A stretch of DNA of 64,000 nt, from positions 1,178,001 to 1,242,000 of the forward strand of contig NW_020843829.1 in NCBI RefSeq assembly GCF_003704095.1. The letters are read 5' to 3'. Position 1 is the stretch's first letter, and each line of letters starts with the position of its first letter. The notes beneath the pieces were generated by a model. That model worked only from the letters and a program-made list of their open reading frames with translations. It had not been told where the DNA came from and ran no database searches. Shown piece after piece: positions 31,801 through 52,700 of this stretch. This stretch comes from Pocillopora damicornis. Taxonomy: Eukaryota. The translations under genes were made by a program, and so were the position numbers.

Positions 31801-34800
31801 TGGAAAGAAACAGTAGCTGTTCTATCATTTTCTCCTCTGGTAAAATTGGAAAGACAGCAAGGCTAACATGAAGGTACTTTGTTATGTTCGCATTTATTGA
31901 GGAGTTAAAGGATAAGTTACGTTAATAAAAATTTTCCTTACTTTTGGCTGTCCTGGTTCACGTGAGAGAGCTGTCCATATTTCAGTCAAGGCGCCATCGC
32001 TTTTCGCTTTCGCCATTTCATCCTTGTATATATAATCTTGAGTAGAGTTTCTACATCCGAAAAACAACAACATTTCGCCCCACTTTCCCGACGAAGGTTG
32101 TGAAGCATTCTCGTCCTGTTCTTTTTCTGAGAAGAGTTGACGCTGCAAAGAAGAGCTACCCCCGAAGGAACGATGTGGCGTAGGAGGAGTTGTTTCAGGA
32201 GAGTCCCCACGGGTGAAAGCAAAGTTTCGACGCTGTATTAAAGGGCTTGAGTCTGGTGTAAGGTCCAACGTCCTTGGCTTAGGAGCACTTGTGTTCACAA
32301 TGTCAAATTGGCGCTGTTGCCAAAAGCTTCTGAAAGGAGCTATACCAGTCCCAGGCCCCACCATTATCACTGGGACCGTGCCATCTTCGGGCAAATGAAA
32401 GGTCTGGGCTCTATAAAAAAGGAAATAGGTAGCCTGGTCAAAGGTGATCTTGCCTCTCATATGTTTGCTAATCTAAGATAAACAGAGAGTTTCCTTTTTT
32501 TTCGGAATTTAAGAGGAAAAAAAGGCGGAGAAATGGTGAACATATAAACACTTAAATGATGCACATTGGACATGGTATCTTGTGACTTTAAAGGTGTGTA
32601 CTGCCCTGAGGTGAATTTCTGAGTTTTAAAATCATTCATCTCCACTCATACTCAGTACATACCAACGTTTTTATACTAACTGAGTTTCAAAACGCAAAAG
32701 AAGTTGAGACATGGACTTACTGCCGCACGTAACAGGCCACTTTGTCTCCAGGTTGCAAACTATTTAACCACGTGGAGCAAACGCCATGATGTACGGGACC
32801 TTTTCCACCTGAGACGTAACGCAGCAGAGTACATAGAGTTACCAAGACAATCCATGAAAAAAAACTCGTTAAATATATCAGGTTGTACACAGCTCCGAAG
32901 AATACCACAATTAATCCGTAACTTCATAAGATATAAATCATATTAAATTTCTCCATTTTACCTGCTATACATTTTATTGTCAAATAGTTGGTGTCATATC
33001 GAGAGAACACCATCTCGCTGATAACTTTCAGTCTACTTTCATCACCATATTGTTCTATGATTGCTGATCACTTCTGAAGCGCACACAAAAAGCACTATTC
33101 TAATTTGTTGCCCTCTATTGTCAAGGGAGAATTTTCAATTAAACACAGTTCCTCATATTTCTTACTCACTTATATTTCTTCTTACTGCAGAATCAACTAC
33201 CTCACCTCTCTTGTTATATTGTACCACTGCCACTGTGAGGTGAACTTCACCTGGGAAAAAGTCTGGCGATGATGAGATGGAGTAGAAACGCTGTTGATAA
33301 CAAAGAAATAATTTTAACAAAGATCGTAGTAATTTATGAAAGGAGATTCAGAAAGTCTCTAATCAGCTTTGTCATAAATTTGAGTGAGGTACACACGCGG
33401 GACTTTCAAAAATTCTTTTTGAGATCTTTGCTCTTAGAGTGGGCTGGTAACGCGTTAAGGAGTTTCACGTGTAGCAAAAACAAACTTTACATTCTATCTC
33501 AGTCCCATAAATTTGAGACGGGTTTTAAAACTCTAACATAACACTTCACTCCTTAACATCAGGATGAATTTTCTCCAAACCGTTCTCGTCACAATTTCTA
33601 TGGTCCCCAACAATGAGAACTTGCGTAACAATTAAAAGCGCCTTCAGTTGGTGATCATTTCCTATACTCTCATGACCTTAATGTTTGATTCAGCCGTGAT
33701 ACTGTGAGGATAGATTAGACGCTAGTCGCCCTTTTGGATTAAGGGCTTAAACAGTGACCATGACTTATGGCTGATAACGAAGAAGGCTCGTTTGACTCTC
33801 ACAAAGACAGCTTCAGCTCCTGTCGATCTACCAAGGCGGAGCTAAAGGAAGGGGTGGGAGTCCAAAGGAGCATGTGACCCCCTCCCACCGTTCGCCCCTC
33901 TCTTCGTCAAGAAAAAGTGTTAATTTATGCAGGCCTCTCAATGCCATTAGGATGCCGCCCTTTTTTTCTTTTTCGGAAGTACTGCCCACACCCAGTTTAT
34001 ATGATGCGCATGTTTACTTCCTTCAATAAATTCTCCTACCCTAGGGGGACCTTTACTTATTAACGTCATCAAACGGGATTGTTTTAGCGGGTTTCACCGT
34101 AAACAATTAGGTGATTGTAACTTCTTTCAGGTCTATCAAGCAGTGCGACTTACCGGCTGCAACAAAGGCAGCTGGGTGAGTAATAAGTCAGCTGGAACTT
34201 GTAAGGAAGGATGCTCTTGTAGCACATCAAGAATGTTACATTCACTTCCAAACTTCCAGTCCTCGTATCGGTTATTACCCTGAGAGAAAAAGAAATAGAC
34301 AAAAGAAAACGAAAGAGTTAAATTAAAAGCATTTATGAAGGAAGACTCAAGTTCAGAACTTAGAAGGGCTTTTACATATATAACGAGGAACAGACGGAAG
34401 ACCTCACCTGGCTAAGAATCTCAAGTTTTTCCTTTTCTGCCGGGTCAGTAGCCTAAAAAGAAGTGTGGAAATTTTTAAATGGATATTAAAATGGTAATGT
34501 CTTAGTTCAGTAGGTCGAAAATATAGACAAACAAATAAGTGGAAATGAGATGTTGCCGATAAACGAAAACTACGAAAGTAGGCTTTCGTTATCGCATCCT
34601 GGGGTACGGGATCTTACAGATAACCAAACGAAATTGACAGTGATACACTGTTACTCGTCCCAACCTGGGTACGCCGCCGAGGTACAGGAAAGTTCGTGAT
34701 ATTCAGGGCTCGAAATAAAATAAACTGGAACTACAGTAAAAAGCACTGGTACTAGCATTAGAGAGAGGAATCTGTTAGACTTAAAATGAACTGTAGCGGA

Positions 34801-37800
34801 ATTGTAAATCACAATAATTGGTTCAACCGTTGAGACTTTACCGTAGCAGACAAAGCTTTCAGGATCTGCGGTGAAGGAACACTTGTGACGTCCAGGTAAC
34901 GTGAGAGAGCTTGACGCAGCGTGGTTTGTGACGGAAGACGGTTGTAAGTTTCCCATTTCTTGGCTGTTTTTAGAATACCTAAGTAAAGAATAGCAGTAAA
35001 ATTATTACCTTCTCTCACCTGACGTTTGACCCCACCCCTCTTTGGTAATTGGTGGTGTGTTCTAAGCAGGATACTAAATTCCTTCAGAGCCTTTTCCACC
35101 CCGGAGCATGAATGGGGGCCGGCATGCTGTCAAGGAAACTGGACGAAATGCTGTTGGAAGGTTTTCGGTTAAGTATAGACGACGTGCTGACTGGTCACTG
35201 AAAATATCTCACAATTTTTTTTTTTTTTAACTGAACTAAAGTTCACCTTTGACTTCTCGTGAGGCCTCGACAACGATTGGTTTATCGGGATCGACGTCAT
35301 CTGATAGCCTGTCAATCAAAGCTTGCACCAGCTCTGGGCGATTCGCGGGAAAGATGGCCACATGATCACCTGGTTTGTACTGCAGTTCTGTGCTGTTCTC
35401 TGTTTTGAGCCGGACTGAGATGGTCGAGCGACTAAAAGAAAAAAATAGCGTTTAAGTTATAATTTGTCTGATTTTCAGCCTTTATTCAAGAAATGCCTTC
35501 TTCCTGTGTTTGTCGCTCTCAAAGAAAACTGACAACGGCAATCTTTAGGCACCTTTATAATATTTTAACCCTTTAACTCCCGTGACTGACAAAGACATAA
35601 TTTCTCCCGACTATATTTATACGATATCATGCAGACAAGTGATGAGAATAAAGAAAAATATCAATTATGATATTACTAATTGATCCGATACCAATTTCTC
35701 CAGACTAACATAATAAGAATCGTTTGGCAATCAGTAAGAAGAACTACTAATGAGAACGTGGGAGTTAACTTTAAAAGGAACAACACTGAAATCCTTTCAG
35801 TAGGTTTCAAGGAATTCTATGATATTGCACTTTTAAGCATTTTTTCAAATGTCATGACTGTCCATGTCCTTTTCCAAGAGATTAGCTAGTTGCTTTCAGA
35901 TAGTCATGCTTACGAGGGAGATCATGATTCGCAAGCTTCTTTTTTCTTTTTTTTTCTTTGTTGTTGTTGATGTTGTCAGCCCACCCTTACTCATTGGCAG
36001 CCACTTATCGAGAGCTTCGAACTCTGGTAGAATCAACTTTATTCTTGTGCAAATACTATTTACAGAGCTTATCGTTTATACACCCCTCACATCTTATGAT
36101 ACATCATCGAGGAGCACTCGCACTAGATAATTAAACTAAAGAAATCGAGCAACATGCACTTATTATGAAGATATTCGACGTGAAATTCTTCATCAGACTG
36201 TAACTGAACAAAGCATAGATCCCAATGACACCCTCTATTACAAGCCTGTTCACGACCATTTTGGGCCGAAAACTACCTCTTTAAAGTGCATATAGATCGA
36301 ATGTCGTAAATAAAAAACCTAATAACCACAACAGCCAATCAGAACGACGGCAAACACCAGTTTTAACCAATCAAAAGTCTGACGGGCGGGAAAATGATCG
36401 AAAGTTTGAATTCATGAGGGTATGGCATGAGTTTTCGGAAAAATCATAGAGCTTAGCTAAGTAATATCAAACTTGTTCCAGAGTACGATGGACCGTCGAT
36501 TGAAATTGCTCTGATACAATATAAACATTATTGCAAACTACTTATGCAGGCCTTGTTTGATAACGCAAACATTTTCGTTGGCAGTGTTGTTGTTGTTGCT
36601 TTTTTTTTCCTTTGTTTGTTTGTTTTTTTTAATCCCTTATGACATTTTAGAATCGTTTCCGCAGAACACGCATAAACATCAGCTGTTGTTGATCAGGGCT
36701 TGTTTGGGCGCAGAGTCCATCCCTTCTATCGGTGACCTGCACATCACCAGTCACATTCTGACGCGCAACTCTGCGCAGATGCACCACTTGAACCACAGGC
36801 GCAACTCTTCTATCTATGGGTTGCATTTGGTCACCAGTCACCTTCTGCTGACGTTTGGTGATCTGATTTCGCTTAACGCTCTGCTTGTTCTTTATTTTTC
36901 CAGGTTTTTCAGAAACTGACCGAGGTTCATGGCATCCACCAATCGTGTTCTTCCTGTGTGAAATTTTTGTGGATCGTTCCATGGCCGGCTCGTCCCCTTG
37001 ACGCTTGGACACCATAACTGTCACTCGCGTTCGACGAACTAAGCTCGGCCTGAGGATCTCTCCTTCAGTTTGGACTGCTGGTGATCTTTTTCTTGAACTT
37101 TGGACAATATCATTCTTACGTGACGTTAACACCGGTTTGGCTACCGCTACTCCTCTCCGCCTCTCTTTTTGTTGACCTTCAGGATGTTTGACTAAACTCT
37201 GTGTTATTTTGCAGCAATGGACCTCAACCTGTTTCTCTCTGAAAGGAAACTGATCTTGAACCAAACTACAACTAAGCTCTCTTATTCGCCGTTCATTGAT
37301 TGCAGGCAAACAAAGTGTATTCTTCTTGGGAGCTTTGGATGCACAACAATAGGCCTCCTTCTGCTCCCCCGTTACACTCTGAGACGAGGAATTCGCTGTT
37401 ACTGGCGCTTCTTCGCACTTCGTCGACAGCGCAGTACAAGAAATCGTTGGTGTCTCTTCATTCGTGAGGAGCGAAGTGTCACGGTAACAGAAAATGTCCG
37501 ATGTTTCTTGAATTTTGCTGAACGAAGTCTGTGTTGTAACCCCTTCGGGCTGCTTCAGACCGGTATCTCCTGGAGAACAGCAATGATTCCTATTTCGGAA
37601 AGCCTCACATAACTCCATCATCGTTTGAGTTTGGGTTTTTCGGCTCATGTTCTTTGAATTTTTAGGAGGCAACTAGACAATTGGTACGAGTTGGAAAGGT
37701 TGAGTGTTTTAAGTTAAATGCATTCAATTTATATTTAATTGAATGAGGTCATAAGTGGTTGGTATACGTGGAGTCAACAGAAACGACGTAAATGTGAAGC

Positions 37801-40800
37801 CCTGGGTGATCAAATTGAAATCACGGAATCGTTACCTGTTGCTTATTTTAAAAAGTTTGACACAGAAACGACGTAAATGTAAAGTGCAAATGTGAAACGT
37901 AAATGTGAAGCGCTACGTGGTCAAATTGAAGTCACGGAATCGTTACCTGTTGCTAAGTTTTGACAAATTTGACCCATTAAAACATTTTCTAAGAGCAAAT
38001 GTCGTAAATACTTAGCTTATCATATGTAAAAACCGATTACGATAGAAGATATATTTAAAAAAACTTAAAAGTCGTTTTTTTCGGGTCATAAAGTGCTCTT
38101 ATTTTATTTTAAAAGTGTCCCGTGGACTGGTAACGAATTAGCGGGTGATGACGTAGGGAAACTGAGAAACCTCTCAATCGCTCTGACGAAGGGTTACCGC
38201 CCGAAACGTCAGCCTTTAAACTCTTTACGGTGGCCAATTTGTTTTCCATGACGAAATCTATGTCAAGAATGGGTAGCTGTGATTGTTTCTGTTGCCATAA
38301 CATTTTATTCCCTCGCACTGACGAAGGTTCCCCTTGCTTAGTGCTCTCGAGTTTCGTTGCTGTGCAGTAATTCCCTTAGCAAACCAAAAGCTGACTTTTG
38401 ACGAAAGAGTCAGCTGTAACACGAGGCACGATTATTTTTCGCCGAGAATTCATCGGGCAGTTTCACTGCAAGTTGCTCCTTTCCTTAGAGATTGCAAAGG
38501 CAGAGGCTATCGTCGTCGAGCCGGTCAAACGGAAAACGAGTAAGTATATAATTATCTGATTCAAGTTAATCTCAAATAGGGGGTTAATAGAGAAAAACTT
38601 TTTTTCGTTTAAGGGCAGCATTACCATATGACCCATTTCGCTCAATGGCAAATAATTGAAATCAGTATGTAAATGAATATTTCGTATGCATCGACTTTCA
38701 CACAACCTGTGGATTCGCTATCATCTAATTCAATAAAATTTATGTTACTCTATTTATCTACCTAATTTGGAAGGCCTTACAGCTCCATCATTGTAAGGTT
38801 CAGGTTTTATTACTCATATTGTTTGACTTTTCACGACGCAAAAAGGCGGTTCTTGCAAGTCAAAAAGGTAGAGCGTCAATAAAGAAAAGACATCTTTACT
38901 CATTCACTGACCTGGATTCAGGAGACTGCAAGTTCTTCACTGATAACAACGTCGCAGATCGCACTGTCTTACCGCAAATATGAGTCAAACCTATACAGAC
39001 AAGAAGGAATCAAATAAATAATTGGATGGCAAGAAAGATGACAGAATATTCAAATATGAAATATAATAGACTTGTAATTTGATCTACTCTGTACGCAATT
39101 GCAGTCTCGTGTCCCTAGCAAGTATTTGTGCCATTTTGGTTATATAGCTAAATAAGAATCCGCGCCATTTCAAATACCTGTTAATTAAGGGAGAAGTGTC
39201 ACTTTCAAGAACCTCGTAATTTTCATTTATTTTTTAAAACGAGTTCAGTGTCACAATTGTCTAATGGTGGTGACAAATTACATTGTTTCTGAAGTTTACT
39301 TCGCCCGGCTTAACGGTGAGAGGTTAAACTAGCTAATTAATAAATTCAAAATGTCTCTGAACACATTTCTAACCTCGGACAATTTCACTGTGTCCGTCCG
39401 GTCCATCAGTTGCTTCAGTAAAAGCATGCACGGCGGTGATCATAATTGTAGCAAGCCGAAAGCGGCCTGGTACCCAGCCGCTCGGTACTGTATCTAGAGA
39501 CTGACTGGCCTCATTTGTTATTTCGTCACTGATACAGAATGAGTCACAGGCGGCCTGAGGATTCAAAGACAAATAAATTCAATAGGTCTTGGGATTTGAC
39601 ATAGGGGAAGATAAATTGATTGGGAAATGATTGCAACTGCTTTTGGTTCGTTTTGACTATCGGCATTCAATTGGAAAGCCTCAGACAGCTGTAAGGGGAA
39701 CAACACTCAACTTCCAGCTACCGTTCATATCTCAAAAATGTCCGTATTTCAGTCCTCTAGTATTTATTACTTCGATCAGTTCCAATATATTTTCACTCGT
39801 TCTGAAGAGAATAAGGCAGCTTTCAGGGTGAGTCTAACAGTTAACGGTTAAACGAGCTTGCAAACCTATAATGTTAGTAAGCTTCTCCGAACATGTTGTT
39901 CTTTACCTTAAATACGTCTTTGGCCCACATTTTGAAAGACTCCTCTTGACCACATAACTCATCCCCTTCTCCCATCTTCAACACGGGCTCTCCTCCAAGT
40001 TCCCGAATGATCTTGTCAAGCGAGCGAGCAAATGCACAGAAGTTTGGGTAGGCCCTGGAGCCCAGGCCAAACACAGAGTATCTTTAAAGTTTAAAACATA
40101 TGTATTAACCCTTGCAAGCGACACATCGTAAATAAGCGACTCCGTTCTACTGTCACATAGTATATTAAACAAACAGACGCGTCGTCAGTTATAATTTCAA
40201 TTTTTAATTAAACATGTAGGGTCTAAGTTTATGTGGAATAAAAACTCGAATTTTGGAGTTCCTTTTATACAAGTTCATTTGTACCCTCGTCACTAAATGT
40301 TTTCCGTATCTTAACTTGGTTATAGCTGTTCGAACTCTACACATTTCGTTTAGACTGGTGTCTTTAATCAGGAACTGTATCCTCCAAACGCGATGTGTCT
40401 AATATGCGATTTTAGAACAACCACTTACGTAGGAATTTCTCGTTGTGTCTCATTTTTTGGGATATTTTTTTGTTTGCTTACCTGAGGTTAGCAAGTGGTT
40501 GACTGTTGTTCATTACATCGATACGTTTTTCCTTCTCTTTTTGAACCAACAGGCTGCCGAGTTGTTTCATCATGTTGCGCGACGATCGACTTCTAAAACA
40601 CAAGAAATAGCGAGGATATAAAATCTGCATCCCCTATTTAACGATCAGATTATAAGCGAAATAACAGCAATAATAATGTTTATGATGATATTATAAAGGA
40701 TTGAAAAGAGAAGCTCGGTGTGAAAGTTTTCTAGGGACGAAATACAATTGTTGAGTAGGGATTAAACAAATGAACAAATTGAATGGGCTTCCAACCTAAT

Positions 40801-46800: not shown

Positions 46801-49773
46801 TATTGACAACGCTTGCAGAACTAAAAATAGTACATAATCACAACGTAAATATTTCATAATCACCTGATATTTCCCTTGTTCGTTCCGTACTTTATGTGCT
46901 TACAAATCGCCTCGAACATTTCGGAGGGTGTGTTCACATGTCGAGCGTCGAATACCTAAAACAAATGAAATGACATAAGTACGAATCAATGGCCTCAGTA
47001 GCTCAGTGATGCAAAAGCTTGAAATGGGACAGAAATTTACGTTAGAGGTATGGGGGAATGCATTGTTCCCATAATAAGCAAGAAAGACGGGATGTCTGAA
47101 TTTTCGCAAGAATCAATTCAAATTTTCCAGCACTTAAACACTGATAGTTTCAAAGTAAAATTGGAACTGGATAATGCATGGATATTACAGGGAGAAGTTA
47201 CACGTTAATCACTTCTGGAAGTTAAAGGATTAAAGGAGCAAGGTGACGCTGTAGAATTTCTTAACGATTTAGCCTTGATTTTCAAGCTCGTCATTAATTT
47301 GCTTTCCTCCTAACACTGCTTGTAGAGACAGAGTGACTCACTTGAAGTTTGTTCCACTGAATTCGTCCTATACATCGAGGGGCATTTCTCCAAGCCATTC
47401 TACATCCAAAGATGAGCTCCTTTTCTGTGAGTTCATAGGTCCCAGTCTTTTCAATCTCCTTCATTACTTCCCCTAAACGCAGCTTGTGGGCCGAACTATT
47501 CTCACTGAAGAAAAGGAACGACAAATCAGCCAGTGGAACTTATCTCGATTAAGGAATCGGGTACTCATTTACAATATTTGAAATTTTGCTAAGACTGATG
47601 GACAATTTCCTGATAGCTTGTTTTATCAGAAACCTTCCAAGGAAGGGCTGTTCAAACCATGATCAAGTTAAAACAAAGTTAGCGCATTTTCTTTACTAAC
47701 CCTAGCTTGTAGCTCTGCAGACAATTTTACTGTTAATAATTCTATATCCTTCACCACTACTTTACAGTCAGATTCAACCCAACGAAACTTTAGTTCTCAT
47801 AACGCTTTTCCATACCAGAAGAGTCAGTACCAAGTCTTCAAATGCCAATACTGCACTAGTAAAGACGTCTGTCACTATTTGAGTACTTCATATGAGTTCT
47901 GATTTACACTTGCGACACAACGACACAAAGAAAAGATATTTTTTCCACCTAATATCATTTCCTTAATATTGTATCGTGTTATTTTCATCTTATTTCTCTT
48001 TCAACAATGCTCATTAAAACTGAGGCTTAGGTATTGATATTTCATTTTAGAAGAGTGATTTAAATCTCAATTTTTTTCCGTTTCCGCCAATGTACCATTG
48101 TATACTCGAGCTTTTTTCTAAAACTCACAGTTTCATGGCTCCGTAATACTGCTGGAGGAAATCCTTAGCCTGAACTATCACCTCCTCTGGTTGCCGCGGT
48201 ACACCATAAAGCCTCTTAGGAGCAGCTTCTCCCCCGTATGGCTGCATCAAAGACCCCAAGCAACGACCTGCAGTGCAGTTTATAGGCTGGAAAAACAAAG
48301 ATGCTGTTGTTTATAACGGTCGGTCCACAAACAGTTTTTACAAATTTCAGGCTCTATTCATTTACGACCTCATACACAGTAACTTTAAAGTATCAAAGCC
48401 CTCGTACTTCTAACGAAAGGGTTAAATAAATGGAAGAAGAAAAAGCAAAATAGCTGAATGAATCATTTTTAGAGCGCGACGGATCATCCACGTAACTTGA
48501 AAATAATAATTTTTGATGAAATAAATTTCATTCGACCTGCGGATGAAAATCAAGTGAAGCAATCCACCTCACAGGTGGATTACAATTTAAAGAATTGCAA
48601 ATAAGAAGCCTGGAACAATTCAGGCTTCGACGGGATTCGAACCCGTGCCTTGAGAATTCTGTTGAAAATATTTATTGACGATAGTGTTCACTCAACACTA
48701 CTGACTACGTTATTTTTGCTATTGATTTGGAAAAGCCGGAAAAATATTTGCTAGCAATATTGATCATTAAATGATGTTTTTCGGGTGGAAGGGGAAGAGA
48801 ATTTCTCGGAATTCACGAAGATATATTTTCTGATAGGAGCTCCTGTTTGCTAATTTTACTGTCCACCACTTTTTTTATCAAAAATTTTTATCAAAACAGC
48901 GTACTGAAAATGTTTACAACAATTCAAGGACAGGTCATAATTTTTGAGTTAGAAGTGGGTGGCGATGGCTAAGTGGATAATCATTAAGCTCTTTTGAAAC
49001 TGTTTGCTTACCAATACGCAATCAGGACAACTACCATTAGACACGTTTAAGGGACAAAAGTGGCAACTTACAATCATGGCCTTTTGATGTAGAGTGTCCG
49101 TCGTGTACTTGCCATCGAGGAGATTCTGTAACCTGACATATTTCGGATTTTGTGGTTTTGACAAAAAGTTGGTGACCGGGCAACCTTTGGATTGGAGTGA
49201 CTCGCTGAGTATTTCACTTTCGTTTTCTGGATGTCCGTTGGCCATAGTTTGAGACGGTGGCGCTTCAGGATCTTCGTTCTCAACATGATGCTTTTTTCCT
49301 GCGTCTTCACTTGTAGAAACTGGCCCTACTTGGGTGGTTTGTGCTTGATCCATATGTGATTCACCATTTACCTCTCCGTTCAAGTCCTTGTTAGCTTTTG
49401 GAGTACTTGGCGTTCGTGGCCTGTTTTTTCGCACCGTCTTTACAGAACCTTTGTCGTCGAAGGCCGTTTCTAGGTACGCTTGAAACCCGTCCTTGGCACG
49501 TAGTTTCATCGCAATCACCTCGCCGGTGGGAACTTTGTCGATAATCTCTAACGCCTTATGGTATGGCATGCTCTCCACAGACTTCCCATCCACTTCAAGA
49601 ATTACGTCCCCAGTTTGTATCAAACCCGTCTCGTGAGCTACTCCTCCCTTAACGACGTGCGACACAACGAGGTAAGGACTTTCGCTTCGCTTACTCGTCA
49701 CAAAACCCACTCCGCCAAGTTTCCGCTTTGCGATGTTAACAATAATACTGCCGTCGCTGGAATTGGCATCCAT
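28888..49773 (-). CDS. NOS: Nitric oxide synthase, PDZ-containing nNOS (NOS1)-like, 33 coding exons, 1456 aa
   Basis: Exons: 49773-49072, 48286-48129, 47504-47342, 46955-46864, 46093-45952, 45739-45600, 45022-44912, 44736-44673, 44488-44387, 44140-44072, 43271-43188, 42896-42855, 42605-42520, 41872-41728, 41296-41192, 40858-40815, 40592-40482, 40081-39907, 39554-39374, 38990-38912, 35431-35247, 34978-34842, 34452-34408, 34279-34154, 33290-33206, 32808-32721, 32410-31942, 31628-31503, 31034-30969, 30497-30412, 30093-30057, 29836-29757, 28933-28888. They sum to 4371 nt in one open frame. Motifs: Zn CTAGRC, heme [34 protein letters not shown], Ca[72 protein letters not shown]. The last three exons are less certain. 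Confidence 0.96.
29081..29269. mobile_element. Hairpin MITE in the last NOS intron
   Basis: Internal inverted repeat ATAGTAAACGGCGC / GCGCCGTTTACTAT with AGCCT/AGGCT ends. Confidence 0.55.
31942..32410 (-). CDS. NOS: NOS reductase (NADPH-binding) exon with long S/T/P-rich insert
   Basis: [30 protein letters not shown]...[10 protein letters not shown]...[10 protein letters not shown]|GT. Confidence 0.93.
36647..37648 (-). CDS. Orphan intronless ORF (333 aa from ATG 37648; 341 codons stop-to-stop) nested in NOS intron 20, same strand
   Basis: 1026-nt open frame in a more GC-rich island within an AT-rich intron. It is preceded by a possible acceptor (tgtctag|37672), has aacATG, and a downstream AATAAA near 36038-36043. 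Basic, low-complexity, no recognisable domain. Confidence 0.6.
   Translation of the reverse strand: MSRKTQTQTMMELCEAFRNRNHCCSPGDTGLKQPEGVTTQTSFSKIQETSDIFCYRDTSLLTNEETPTISCTALSTKCEEAPVTANSSSQSVTGEQKEAYCCASKAPKKNTLCLPAINERRIRELSCSLVQDQFPFREKQVEVHCCKITQSLVKHPEGQQKERRRGVAVAKPVLTSRKNDIVQSSRKRSPAVQTEGEILRPSLVRRTRVTVMVSKRQGDEPAMERSTKISHRKNTIGGCHEPRSVSEKPGKIKNKQSVKRNQITKRQQKVTGDQMQPIDRRVAPVVQVVHLRRVARQNVTGDVQVTDRRDGLCAQTSPDQQQLMFMRVLRKRF
37778..37960 (+). repeat. Short imperfect direct duplication
   Basis: CAGAAACGACGTAAATGT...TCAAATTGAA.TCACGGAATCGTTACCTGTTGCT appears twice. Confidence 0.75.
38180..38213 (+). ncRNA. Minimal type-I hammerhead ribozyme motif (Penelope-like element terminus)
   Basis: GCT-CTGACGA-A-GGG TTACCG CCC-GAAA-CGTC-AGC: CUGANGA and GAAA core, 3-bp stem II, ACGT palindromic stem III, GUC cleavage triplet, GCT/AGC stem I. 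Confidence 0.7.
41469..41681 (+). mobile_element. Full-length ~210-bp coral MITE
   Basis: TTAACCTTT...CCTAACATCAGTATG...GGAGAATTTG..AACAATCAAG...GTAAGGAGAAAT...GGTCAC...GGGGTTAA. Other copies at about 17385-17510, 29870-30031, 33551-33751, 8731-8830 (reverse) and 11880-12220 (reverse, interrupted). Confidence 0.8.
43337..43699. mobile_element. MITE with 14-bp TIRs
   Basis: AGGGACCTTTAGCA ... TGCTAAAGGTCCCT, with subterminal ACGGCAACG/CGTCGCCGTCG motifs. Confidence 0.85.
46310..46446. mobile_element. MITE (CCAGGCC..TGTTCAAA / TTCGAACAACCGGGGCCCTGG) with internal TATCCAGTGGATA repeats, inside a SINE-like relic
   Basis: Imperfect TIRs and internal palindromic repeats. Flanks (46203-46300, 46447-46470) resemble a tRNA-derived SINE. 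Confidence 0.65.
48535..48650 (-). mobile_element. tRNA-derived SINE fragment
   Basis: B-box GGTTCGAATCC on the minus strand followed by GAAGCCTGAA; a related fragment lies at about 10455-10515. No cloverleaf. Confidence 0.6.
49072..49773 (-). CDS. NOS: NOS first coding exon: PDZ domain, beta-finger and linker
   Basis: KRKLGGVGF carboxylate loop, [34 protein letters not shown] beta-finger. The exon's acceptor (exon starts 49818) implies an upstream 5'UTR exon. Confidence 0.93.
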
Positions 49774-52700
49774 GTTGTCTCTTTTTACAAGTATCGTCCA
49801 CAACAAAACGACACAAACCTGGAAAATATACAGCAGTTATTGTGTAGTGTTATTAAAGCCACTTCAGATAAAAGTGTGAATGATATGCTTTTCAGGGATA
49901 CTCAGAGAGTTTATAACTGGAAAAGCCTCTCGTGATTCCGTGGTTCTTTTTGCAAACAGAAAACAGATAAAATCTGAAGGGATTTCTTCCTACGCGTGTT
50001 TAATTATTAATGGCCTTTCTCGTAAACATGCCATTACTTTACGATGTTTTCGTGAACAAAAATGACCAAAGAATGTGACTCTCACGTTATTTGGTTTTCA
50101 TTTGTATCTAACGCGATCAGCTCAGTGACTTTTCAACTGATTTTAAGAGGCTTAAAGAAGAGATTGTCCTCGTCAGGTCAGTTCACAGTTCACATGCGAT
50201 TTTAAACCTATCGCACCACCCCCAATAAAATATTCAGTAAACTGATGGGTAAAGTCATGAACATAATTTGGCATTCCCGGACCTTAAAACACTGTGAAAG
50301 GGGTGAGAGCGGCGATAATAGCTACTCTCGAACAAATCAAGGTGTTTGTTTAATACTCCTCCGAACTGACTGTGGAAACCGTAACTTCTCGACCATTTTT
50401 ACGGAACATCGACCTGCTATTTTCCCTGTTTATCGACATTCAAGGACAAACTACTAATTCAAAGTCACGTTACATATGTATCTACTAACTAATCGAGTTT
50501 CAAAAAACTGCTGTCCTCTTTGAGAAGATTGTTTTAAAAGCAATTTCTTCTTAAATCATCTCTCATGCCACCACAAACTTTTTTAGTCCCACACGTTAAG
50601 ACAAATTTTGCGGTTTAATGTTGGCGAGATTTTAAACAGCCGATTCCCATTGTTATCTCAGCCTCAATATGTACTTATTGAATGAGTAGAAGGGCCATAC
50701 GGTTGAATATTTTGTTCAGGGTCATGACGCACATACCTTTCCTCATTCGGTCCATATTTTCCTGTGTGGTCCAATCAAACTCTGTCAATAAGTATTTTAT
50801 CGTGTGACCACTAAGTCTTTAAACTGTATGATATTATGTTTGAAACCAAATAGACCGCGACTGCCCACTTAAAAAAAACGGAGCGCATTGGAGATTCTAC
50901 AATAAAAACTTTTTCCTTTATTTTTTTCGAGTCAGAACAAGAAAATCACAATTTACTGAAAAACGCGCCTTATCTTCTCATTTCCGTTACATTGCAGGTT
51001 TAAGTCCACAATTCAAATTCACGTTCTAGGAGATCACAACCAACAGAGATCCGTGTGTGTGAGTTTTCGGACGGCTTTTCCCGGATCGGCTCACGTCAAC
51101 TTGTTCGGCCCTGCGTGCGTCAGCTTTCAGTATTTTATAGGATTGCGTGACCCAGGCGGTGTGGATCATATGATAAAACACAATATTAAATACTAGTTTT
51201 AAGCGTTGGTTAAAAAGTCTAAAAAGGTACCTATTTGCAATACCACGGCTCAGGAATTTGTGCTCGATTCCCTCAAAAAACTTTAAGTGCCAAACATAAA
51301 TGTTGATAGTATTTATAGTCGACAGGGGCGGTCGGCACCATACTCTATATCTAGATATTTAATTTTTCGTGGCTAAATAATATATTTGTACGGGTACGTG
51401 TGACAACTTTTAAACCGCCCACCTAAATGTAAAATAAGGTCACCAAAACAATGTTTCTATGTTTCGCCTGAGAAAGAAACACCAAAACAAGCAAAACTAA
51501 CTAAGCCATGCATTGAGCAGGCATTTCAGTTAAGTCCTGAGGTATTTTCTTTTCATGAAAATTAAGCTTACACGTGCAAAGCAAGCCTGAGCTGAGGGAC
51601 AAACATAAGCTCGGTGATATTTACAAGTGAATCAGCATCGGACCTATAGTGACATTTGCTGCTGCGGGAACACAAATTTTTGTCGGGACCGGCTCACGAC
51701 AACCGATCAGTTCAATGGTGACATTCAACACTAATTCCCAAACAAAATAGGACCGCTCTATTCTTTCCCGCCTAAAATAAGTTCTGCCTTCAGTGATTGT
51801 CTTCTTCTTTCTTTTTTCTTTTTTGTTTCAAATTCTTCTTCGCTGTAGTCTTATTTTTGTCCAAAGTTATTTTAAGAAGCTACGAAGCAAGTGCACTCGC
51901 TGCGTGGCTAAATATTTGCTAAATTGGGTCTTAGTCTCTAACAATCCTAATGTTAAGCAATAAACAGAGAAGCAATGGAGCAGATAATGACACTCATCAT
52001 TTAGTTTCACAAAGTGCCGTTCTGAGTGCATGAATTTACACTCACTACTTTGCTATATGTCTACTGTGGCGCTCTAAAGTATACTCGATTATAAACGAGC
52101 GTTCATTAAAATTTGATATTTTTGGTTTACATACAACAACTCCTTTCCTTTCACCAAACTTCAGTCAGTGGACCATTGAAATAGGGAGGCGATCTTTGTT
52201 AGTAGTGAGACTTCATTCGAACAAATTACAAATTTTCTTAAGGTAAAAGCCAACTGAACACCACAGAAACTTGAAATGAAAACGAATAAAAAAATCATCC
52301 TTTCACAGTCAGAGTTACAGTCATTTCATGGTGAGCGGTAAAACCTAATAATCGGCGTGTCATACCCTGGAACATACAAACCACACTAAATGATTGGGAG
52401 CATTAATTTGTCTTCCCAAGAGTAGACATCTCAATAGTTTTCTTCAACATAAGTATAATTGGGATACCTTGGAGCCTAATTAAGGGTCATGTGATGTGGA
52501 CCAACGAGCAAGGTTGGTTCCTCGCCTTATCTTAAAAAAACCTAAAAACAAGATCTCAAATATTCTAGAGGTTTAAAAAACGCAGATTTAAAAAAGGGAG
52601 AAAGAAGAATTGCTCCACACGGAGGTTTTTATTTTCACATGCCATCCGTCCCACCAAGTCATGGTCCTTTTTTTTCGTGAGTCGAATCGTCGTATCAAAT

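What the first reader, a model, noticed from the sequence alone, without database searches (positions are those of the whole stretch)
36647..37672. Orphan 333-aa ORF nested in a NOS intron carries multiple LC8/PIN-type motifs: possible intragenic NOS regulator
Seen: a 1026-nt stop-free frame on the NOS sense strand inside the 3.5-kb intron between exons 20 and 21. It begins right after a TAG that doubles as a splice acceptor. It is out of frame with the phase-2 NOS donor (splicing there gives S-C-L-L-K-I-Q-R-T-stop), so it is not a simple cassette exon. The product is basic and looks disordered, with [28 protein letters not shown] and CAQTS, plus an internal repeat [12 protein letters not shown] / [11 protein letters not shown]. 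Known: (K/R)xTQT and related Q-anchored motifs in disordered regions bind dynein light chain LC8/DYNLL, which is the 'protein inhibitor of nNOS' (PIN). Inference: a nested gene encoding a multivalent LC8 scaffold or sponge coupled to its host NOS. Alternatively the acceptor yields an intronically polyadenylated NOS lacking FAD/NADPH domains, which could act as a dominant negative.
Basis: partly seen in the sequence, partly recalled or inferred. Interest (0 to 1): 0.8.

Follow-up and report, generated by a model that had tools for sequence, protein, structure and literature searches.

The report
Fast-evolving orphan gene inside NOS intron
The open frame inside the coral NOS intron is a real, separately transcribed single-exon copy of an unannotated, fast-evolving coral family of basic disordered proteins, and nothing beyond its position ties it to NOS or to LC8.

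Summary
A 1026-nt open frame (333 aa from the ATG at 37648) lies on the minus strand. It is in the sense orientation inside a 3480-nt NOS intron (35432-38911), which I mapped from spliced poly(A) RNA contigs. It is the longest open frame in the window, well beyond chance.

It is not a true orphan. The same genome has an intact paralogue with 29% identity. A full HMM search found 28 relatives that share an N-terminal helix motif and a near-invariant C-terminal motif ending ...RVLRKRF-stop. No Pfam, PDB, NCBIfam, Atlas or literature match exists, and no NCBI or UniRef record holds a member.

Unspliced RNA contigs cover the ORF in four poly(A) libraries, while neighbouring introns are silent. No junction joins it to NOS exons.

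The ORF is intact and indel-free in six congeneric haplotypes. However, its amino-acid changes look neutral within the genus (39 nonsynonymous, 12 synonymous). dN/dS against another genus is 0.8, and that orthologue carries two frameshifts and a stop.

Other family members sit at unrelated loci, so the NOS position is lineage-specific.

The TQT motifs are statistically unusual and specific to this copy, but LC8 binding is untested: the complex prediction gave no verdict. The nested gene is supported. The LC8/NOS regulator reading is not.

The parts
36647..37648 (-). Single-exon coding sequence, 333 aa plus a TAA stop. The open frame extends upstream to 37672.
   Evidence: Intact at 1002 nt in six congeneric haplotypes. 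Paralogue and family.
37583..37621 (-). N-terminal family motif ([13 protein letters not shown]), a predicted helix at aa 10-22.
   Evidence: Alignment A2. AF2 helix 10-22, pLDDT about 78.
36650..36775 (-). C-terminal family domain, aa 292-333. It holds all invariant residues (RR...RR.GLC...L.F.RVLRKRF) and a predicted helix at 318-332.
   Evidence: pLDDT about 90.
37622..37642 (-). RKTQTQT, two overlapping TQT anchors at aa 5-9.
   Evidence: Kept in the congeners and as RKTRTQT in L011. Absent from the other family members.
37523..37543 (-). GVTTQTS, the third TQT anchor. It lies inside a 29-aa insertion that is specific to this copy.
   Evidence: L011 has GVVTQTS.
36114..37688 (.). Unspliced poly(A)-library RNA contig covering the ORF (run X1, depth 15.8). 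Fragments are present in three further runs. The strand is not determinable from contigs.
   Evidence: tables 2 and 8.
37727..37734 (-). TATA-like ATATAAAT, 39-46 nt upstream of the 5' end of the X1 contig. A candidate core promoter (inference).
   Evidence: Kept in 5 of 6 congeneric haplotypes.
36585..36646 (-). ATTAAA followed by a degenerate A-rich tract directly after the stop codon. It could be a poly(A) signal or the remnant of a retrocopy tail (inference).
   Evidence: Homology to the paralogues ends at the stop codon.
35432..38911 (-). Host NOS intron (3480 nt, GT..AG), between a flavodoxin-side exon and an FAD-binding-side exon.
   Evidence: table 5. Pfam tags on the flanking exons of the congener scaffolds.
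35245..35431 (-). NOS exon downstream of the intron.
38912..38987 (-). NOS exon upstream of the intron.

Best explanation
This is a nested, intronless protein-coding gene. It is a lineage-specific copy of an unannotated coral gene family that lodged, in the sense orientation, in one NOS intron in the pocilloporid lineage. Shown: it is covered by its own unspliced poly(A)-library RNA at roughly a tenth to a third of the NOS contig depth. Its 333-aa product is basic (pI 9.9) and almost wholly disordered. It has two short conserved helices, N-terminal (aa 10-22) and C-terminal (aa 318-332, ...RVLRKRF-COOH), which are the only parts conserved across the family. Inferred: the two terminal helices are docking modules, and the basic, Q/T/K/R-rich linker tethers them, most likely in the nucleus or on nucleic acid. 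Transcription probably starts near a TATA-like element about 80 nt upstream of the ATG. The family evolves by tandem duplication, truncation and loss. This copy is under weak constraint: the reading frame and the termini are kept, while the rest drifts. Its relation to NOS is positional, with no evidence of a functional link.
For: The open frame is far beyond chance. An intact, colinear paralogue with conserved ends exists in the same genome. A full HMM search found 28 relatives, 13 of them at E<1e-10, most ending exactly at ...RVLRKRF-stop. AF2 predicts disorder plus two terminal helices. RNA contigs cover the ORF in 4 of 4 poly(A) runs from 2 studies. In the same runs, neighbouring introns and the rest of this intron read 0 to about 5, and the NOS mRNA contigs skip the ORF cleanly. 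The ORF is 1002 nt, intact and in the same NOS intron on Tara metagenome scaffolds of congeners. There are 0 indels in the ORF against 3-7 per comparison in about 1.2 kb of flanks. It has diverged to 29-44% identity from its nearest relatives while keeping every family-invariant residue, which pure neutral decay would not allow. The family-wide dN/dS is also high, 0.60 for the other locus.
Against: Within the genus, 39 of 51 variable sites are nonsynonymous against a neutral expectation of 37, and third codon positions vary least. The probability of no stop under neutrality is 0.11, so it is not significant. dN/dS against the other-genus orthologue L011 is 0.80, and that copy has two frameshifts and one stop. 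The flank indels are partly in low-complexity tracts, so the indel contrast is weaker than the raw counts suggest. Contigs give no strand, no transcript ends and no proof of translation, and one contig (L005) runs 488 nt upstream into a repeat. The function of the family is unknown, and the docking and nuclear reading is inference from composition and the predicted helices only.
Confidence: 0.6

Rival explanations
1. The ORF is a decaying duplicate or retrocopy: an unconstrained relic of a family gene that has not yet acquired a stop in this genus. Its RNA signal would then be intron-derived or spurious.
For: The nonsynonymous-to-synonymous pattern within the genus is neutral. Omega against L011 is 0.8, and L011 is broken. 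The branch in the family tree is long. An A-rich tract follows the stop and homology ends there. The family shows frequent pseudogenes and truncated copies elsewhere.
Against: There are no indels or stops in any of six haplotypes, nor in a 268-member 90% cluster of 324/333-aa calls. All family-invariant residues are retained. About 0.15 substitutions per site since the split from L011 would be expected to create several stops (my extrapolation). RNA depth is well above the neighbouring introns in four runs.
Confidence: 0.25
2. One reading: the product is a multivalent LC8/DYNLL-binding scaffold or sponge that modulates its host NOS.
For: There are three TQT anchors where 0.21 are expected from composition (P about 0.001), and six [TVI]Q[TV] sites, all in predicted disorder. 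The anchors are kept in the congeners and in L011. The genome encodes canonical LC8.
Against: The anchors are absent from 18 relatives, so they are not a family function. Two of the three overlap in a TQTQT run at residues 5-9, with only 4-6 residues N-terminal to them. PMC6607443 reports that partners need residues N-terminal to the anchor, for which its peptides allowed at least 5, and that many TQT peptides do not bind. The N-terminal region evolves at omega 0.81. The significance is post hoc. The LC8-nNOS ('PIN') link is known for mammalian nNOS (my own knowledge), and a motif scan of open minus-strand frames of the window, made without an exon map, showed no GIQVD-like site at a mapped NOS exon (not a thorough test). 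Other family members sit at non-NOS loci.
Confidence: 0.06
3. The ORF is an alternative terminal exon: splicing from the 38912 donor into the AG at 37673 gives an intronically polyadenylated NOS lacking the FAD and NADPH domains.
For: The orientation is sense, and an AG preceded by a moderately pyrimidine-rich stretch lies there. ATTAAA follows downstream.
Against: No such junction appears in four poly(A) runs, where every canonical NOS junction is seen. The frame stops after 9 codons. The AG is AT in haplotype L015. The conserved ATG-to-stop unit matches a free-standing family gene. Contigs can miss rare isoforms.
Confidence: 0.04
4. The ORF belongs to a transposon or an endogenous virus.
For: The intron contains two high-copy interspersed repeats, and the family duplicates locally.
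Against: The genome holds only two significant copies of the ORF. There are no inverted or long terminal repeats around it. There are no Pfam transposase, RT or integrase hits. There is no viral-contig relative. The repeats flanking it belong to different families and do not include it.
Confidence: 0.02

Closest known systems
Nested (intronic, same-strand) protein-coding genes of animals
   Same: A complete intronless gene with its own start and stop inside a host intron. It has separate RNA contigs, and the host mRNA splices over it.
   Different: No evidence of its own mapped TSS or poly(A) site. Constraint is weak and the orthologue is broken in another genus. The nesting is lineage-specific rather than conserved across the family.
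LC8/DYNLL multivalent partners with TQT anchors (ASCIZ-type, LC8Hub; PMC6607443, PMC5963919)
   Same: A disordered chain with several TQT or Q-anchored motifs.
   Different: There are only three strict anchors, two overlapping at the extreme N-terminus. They are not conserved in relatives. No binding evidence exists: the predicted complex gave no verdict.
Taxonomically restricted, rapidly evolving disordered-protein gene families (birth-and-death evolution)
   Same: No homologue outside coral-derived assemblies and no domain match. Omega is 0.6-0.8. Tandem copies, truncations and pseudogenes occur.
   Different: It has two sharply conserved terminal helices, including a near-invariant C-terminal nonapeptide. 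This argues for specific partners rather than a purely compositional function.
Processed retrocopy or pseudogene
   Same: Intronless, homology limited to the CDS, and an A-rich tract just after the stop.
   Different: The parental genes are themselves intronless, so intron loss is uninformative. There is no disabling mutation in this genus. I did not look for target-site duplications.

Membership tests
LC8 (DYNLL) binding partner | TQT (or close) anchor inside an intrinsically disordered region | tested here: met
   TQT at aa 5, 7 and 39. The expectation from composition is 0.21. In the AF2 model, blocks 31-60 have mean pLDDT 40-50, and the TQTQT run at residues 5-9 lies just ahead of the predicted helix at 10-22.
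LC8 (DYNLL) binding partner | Enough residues N-terminal to the anchor to form the beta-strand (the peptides of PMC6607443 allowed at least 5) | tested here: inconclusive
   The first anchor has 4 residues before it and the second has 6. The third (aa 39-41) is unrestricted.
LC8 (DYNLL) binding partner | Direct binding to the LC8 dimer | not testable with these tools
   Complex prediction with two copies of the genome's own LC8 and residues 1-60 gave no verdict (score 0.01). This is no evidence either way.
LC8 (DYNLL) binding partner | Motifs conserved among relatives | tested here: not met
   The motifs are kept in the congeners and in L011, but absent from 18 other family members. One relative has a different TQT in the C-terminal motif.
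Nested intronic gene | Lies wholly within an intron of a host gene | tested here: met
   The spliced NOS contigs skip 35432-38911. The arrangement is the same on congener scaffolds.
Nested intronic gene | Own transcript, not joined to host exons | tested here: inconclusive
   Unspliced contigs cover the ORF in 4 runs, the neighbouring introns are silent, and no junction joins it to NOS exons. The strand and the transcript ends are unknown.
Nested intronic gene | Coding sequence maintained by selection | tested here: inconclusive
   It is intact with no indels in the genus, and the family invariants are kept. But omega is about 1 within the genus and 0.8 between genera, and the other-genus copy is broken.
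The unannotated coral family (N-terminal ...MELCE.F..RN helix; C-terminal RR.GLC...L.F.RVLRKRF-stop) | Colinear match with both terminal motifs and the stop directly after KRF | tested here: met
   The tree places it with P0006, L002 and P0003 at 100/100 support.
Transposon or viral ORF | Multicopy, with terminal repeats and mobile-element domains | tested here: not met
Alternative 3' terminal exon of NOS | Splice junction from the upstream NOS exon into the ORF, with reading-frame continuity | tested here: not met
   There is no such joint. The frame stops after 9 codons. The acceptor AG is not conserved.

The most novel reading that the evidence does not exclude
After landing in the NOS intron, this copy gained a cluster of LC8-type TQT anchors that its relatives lack. 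It now titrates LC8 or bridges LC8 dimers in cells where NOS is transcribed, which would link a nested gene to its host's regulation.
Probability: 0.05. Interest if true: 0.75.

Novelty: new member of a known kind. Interest (0 to 1): 0.3.

Why it matters
The finding adds an unannotated, apparently coral-restricted gene family to the record. No member has an NCBI or UniRef record, so standard coral annotations seem to have missed it. That is easy to do for single-exon genes hidden in introns.

The two sharply conserved terminal helices on an otherwise free-drifting basic chain give a concrete handle for partner hunting. For NOS biology the result is mostly negative: the nesting is a lineage-specific accident of a mobile, duplicating family, not a conserved regulatory coupling.

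Tried and rejected
- Pfam, NCBIfam (79), a PDB profile search (78), the ESM Atlas (32), Rfam over the intron (66), viral contigs (77) and a full-text search for the C-terminal heptapeptide (33) gave no match.
- Complex prediction with the LC8 dimer and residues 1-60 gave no verdict. It counts neither for nor against binding.
- The idea that the paralogue sits in a second NOS gene is rejected. The genome has a single NOS locus, and the paralogue lies among ankyrin-repeat exons of another gene.
- The idea that the sister copy in another coral is also in a NOS intron is rejected. P0006 lies in a tandem array beside a tectonic gene.
- The idea that the two highly expressed stretches in the intron are ends of one element carrying the ORF is rejected. 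They are unrelated high-copy repeats.
- The scan's earlier findings had nothing on this family.
- Two scripts hit the time limit and were rerun in faster form.

Full report
**Observation**

The frame is real, and it lies on the minus strand.
- It spans 36647..37672. That is 341 codons from a TTG, or 333 aa from the ATG at 37648, with a TAA stop at 36647-36649. An in-frame TAG lies directly upstream.
- It is the longest open frame in the window. In 100 first-order Markov copies of the window, the longest frame averaged 151 codons and never exceeded 221.

**Host gene**

- I laid the contigs of four poly(A) RNA libraries on 34700-40200. They gave long (4-5.5 kb) spliced contigs with exons 34841-34976, 35245-35431, 38912-38987, 39371-39553 and 39906-40083.
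- A 3480-nt GT..AG intron on the minus strand (35432-38911) contains the ORF.
- On congener scaffolds, the flanking exons carry Flavodoxin_1 and FAD_binding_1 hits.
- The genome has a single NO_synthase locus, which is this one.

**Expression**

- In the same four libraries, separate unspliced contigs cover the ORF.
  - Run X1 has one 1575-nt contig, 36114-37688, at depth 15.8. The NOS contig in that run has depth 50.6.
  - Runs X2, X13 and X15 have fragments at depth 4-7, against 42-69 for NOS.
- Control stretches in the same runs are nearly silent (tables 2 and 8).
  - Neighbouring intron bins read 0 (39668-39851) and 0-1.2 (39116-39299).
  - The parts of this intron just outside the island (35988-36171 and 37828-38011) read 0-5.
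- Table 5 lists every canonical NOS junction and no junction into the ORF.
- This supports a separate transcript, with limits. Contigs give no strand, no true ends and no proof of translation.
- One Logan contig of unknown library type (L005) runs colinearly from 36508 to 38136, ending in a repeat.
- A TATA-like ATATAAAT lies 39-46 nt upstream of the X1 contig end. It is kept in five of six congeneric haplotypes. This is suggestive only.

**A family, not an orphan**

- A six-frame search of the same genome found an intact 315-aa paralogue on another contig, C2498 (locus L002). It has 29% identity (E 3e-19) and is colinear from start to stop.
- A full HMM search with the pair found 28 proteins, 13 of them at E<1e-10. 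They are 208-470 aa long, and most end exactly at the same C-terminus.
- The alignment shows three parts:
  - an N-terminal motif, roughly S-M-M-E-L-C-E-V-F-Q-x-R-N-x-R-I-F-G-E-R-T;
  - a variable, basic, Q/T/K/R-rich middle, with pI 9.8-11.5;
  - a C-terminal block, RRVA.Q...ND...RR.GLC.QTDP.QQELTFIRVLRKRF-stop, with ten invariant columns.
- The window protein keeps all the invariant residues.
- AlphaFold2 with this alignment predicts disorder throughout, except helices at 10-22 (pLDDT about 78) and 318-332 (about 90).
- Nothing known matches: Pfam, NCBIfam, PDB, ESM Atlas (32), viral contigs (77) and the literature (33).
- In the word-index search, all 42 relatives come from ENA metagenome assemblies or Logan. 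None comes from NCBI or UniRef, and none has a name. The family therefore appears to be unannotated.

**Where the relatives sit**

- The paralogue locus is syntenic with a contig of another coral (L008). There it lies between conserved same-strand blocks that include ankyrin-repeat exons.
  - One L008 copy is intact (P0003, 405 aa).
  - A tandem copy upstream of it is shattered.
- The nearest relative of the window protein (P0006; tree clade support 100/100) lies in a tandem array of three partial copies beside a tectonic gene. There are no NOS exons within 10 kb.
- More distant members form two intact tandem copies beside a Ras-family gene.
- The family therefore evolves by local duplication, truncation and loss. 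The NOS-intron position is specific to the lineage of this genome.
- Homology to the paralogues stops at the stop codon, which is followed by ATTAAA and a degenerate A-rich tract. This is compatible with a retrocopy origin, but it does not prove one.

**Selection**

- Six distinct congeneric haplotypes all carry a 1002-nt intact ORF in the same NOS intron. They are the window, one Logan contig and four Tara metagenome scaffolds.
- A 268-member 90% cluster contains only 324-aa and 333-aa calls. The 324-aa ones are gene-caller start choices, because the ATG is present in the DNA.
- Within the genus the amino-acid pattern is indistinguishable from neutrality.
  - There are 51 variable sites, 39 nonsynonymous and 12 synonymous. 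The neutral expectation is 37 nonsynonymous.
  - Third codon positions vary least.
  - The probability of no stop under neutrality is 0.11.
- The one within-genus signal of constraint is the lack of indels. The ORF has 0, against 3-7 per comparison in about 1.2 kb of flank. Part of that contrast reflects low-complexity tracts in the flanks.
- A 1111-bp scaffold from another genus (L011, 77% nucleotide identity, alignable into the 5' flank) is the orthologue.
  - It has a +4 and a +1 frameshift and a TGA at codon 244.
  - dN/dS against it is 0.80 (dS 0.29), with no region clearly lower.
- The other family locus gives 0.60 overall and 0.43 in the C-terminal block, so high omega is a family trait.
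- Both copies from this genome sit on long branches of the tree, about 1.1.
- My reading is that the frame and the termini are maintained while the rest drifts. That is typical of a disordered, lineage-restricted protein, but a copy sliding toward loss cannot be excluded.

**The LC8 idea**

- The protein has three strict TQT anchors (aa 5, 7 and 39) where composition predicts 0.21 (P about 0.001). It also has six looser [TVI]Q[TV] sites. The 18 relatives have essentially none.
- The anchors are kept in the congeners and in the broken L011 copy.
- The enrichment is therefore real, and it is a derived feature of this copy.
- Several points count against reading much into it.
  - The test is post hoc.
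  - Two of the anchors overlap in a TQTQT run at the very N-terminus.
  - PMC6607443 reports that many TQT peptides do not bind LC8, and that partners need residues N-terminal to the anchor to form the strand, for which its peptides allowed at least five.
  - The N-terminal 45 codons evolve at omega 0.81.
- The genome has two tandem intronless LC8 genes.
- A complex prediction with two LC8 chains and residues 1-60 gave no verdict, which is evidence neither way.
- The NOS-LC8 ('PIN') link rests on a mammalian nNOS segment (my own knowledge). I saw no comparable site in a quick motif scan of open minus-strand frames of the window, made without an exon map, so this was not a thorough test.

**The truncated-NOS alternative**

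There is no junction into the ORF. The frame stops after nine codons. The acceptor AG is AT in haplotype L015.

**Transposon alternative**

Two different high-copy interspersed repeats lie in the intron, at 35436-35803 and 38012-38563. Each has more than 1600 candidate copies in the genome and very high RNA depth. They do not include the ORF, which has only two significant copies in the genome. No terminal repeats bracket it.

**Identity of the genome (inference from my own knowledge)**

The assembly size and contig count (234.35 Mb, 4393 contigs) and the Tara scaffolds suggest a Pocillopora genome. The tools code organism names, so I did not verify this.

**Verdict**

- A nested gene of a new, unannotated coral family is the best reading, with confidence about 0.6.
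- The main rival is a decaying copy, at about 0.25.
- The LC8/NOS regulator model is an untested minority reading, at about 0.05.

Noticed in passing
window 35436-35803 (core about 35565-35768): A roughly 205-bp interspersed repeat with more than 1600 candidate copies in the genome, 85-88% alike. Its summed depth in poly(A) RNA contigs reaches tens of thousands, so it is SINE- or MITE-like. It has no Rfam match.
   Followed up: partly
window 38012-38176 and 38238-38563: Two parts (about 165 and 325 bp) of another high-copy interspersed repeat, usually found 300-500 bp apart elsewhere in the genome. RNA depth is in the thousands. The Logan contig L005 that covers the ORF ends inside it.
   Followed up: partly
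window 37786-37849 and 37897-37960: A 64-nt direct repeat (89% identity), plus a third partial copy of its ACGTAAATGTGAAG core, lies 140-310 nt upstream of the ORF's ATG. It could be a promoter-proximal element or a small tandem duplication.
   Followed up: no
G000:C2498:498390-499340 (+) = L002 1507-2454: An intact 315-aa paralogue of the ORF lies between conserved same-strand blocks of a gene with ankyrin-repeat exons. It is apparently also nested in, or adjoining, a host gene in the sense orientation. I did not check its expression.
   Followed up: partly
L008 6564-7589; L023 5163-5816, 7551-7991 and 9786-10412: In another coral (ENA ERZ25067556) the family shows a shattered tandem copy at one locus. 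At a second locus it shows an array of two N-terminal-half copies plus one internally deleted copy. This is birth-and-death dynamics.
   Followed up: partly
G000:C787:73554-73805 (-) and 76134-76385 (-) (L012, L013): Two tandem, intronless, full-length LC8/DYNLL genes lie about 2.6 kb apart. A third, partial Dynein_light match is on C1208.
   Followed up: no
window 37217-37612 (+): A 131-aa ATG-initiated frame lies on the strand opposite the ORF. It is probably a by-product of the stop-poor composition of the coding strand.
   Followed up: no
window 48952-49836 (-) and 951-1652 (-): These are the next-longest open frames of the window, at 295 and 234 codons. Both exceed the largest value in the Markov null (221). 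I did not examine them.
   Followed up: no
L022 1-1664 (-): A 573-aa ORF with YqaJ / viral alkaline exonuclease hits lies about 8 kb from a family member in a distant coral contig. It is possibly part of a mobile element.
   Followed up: no
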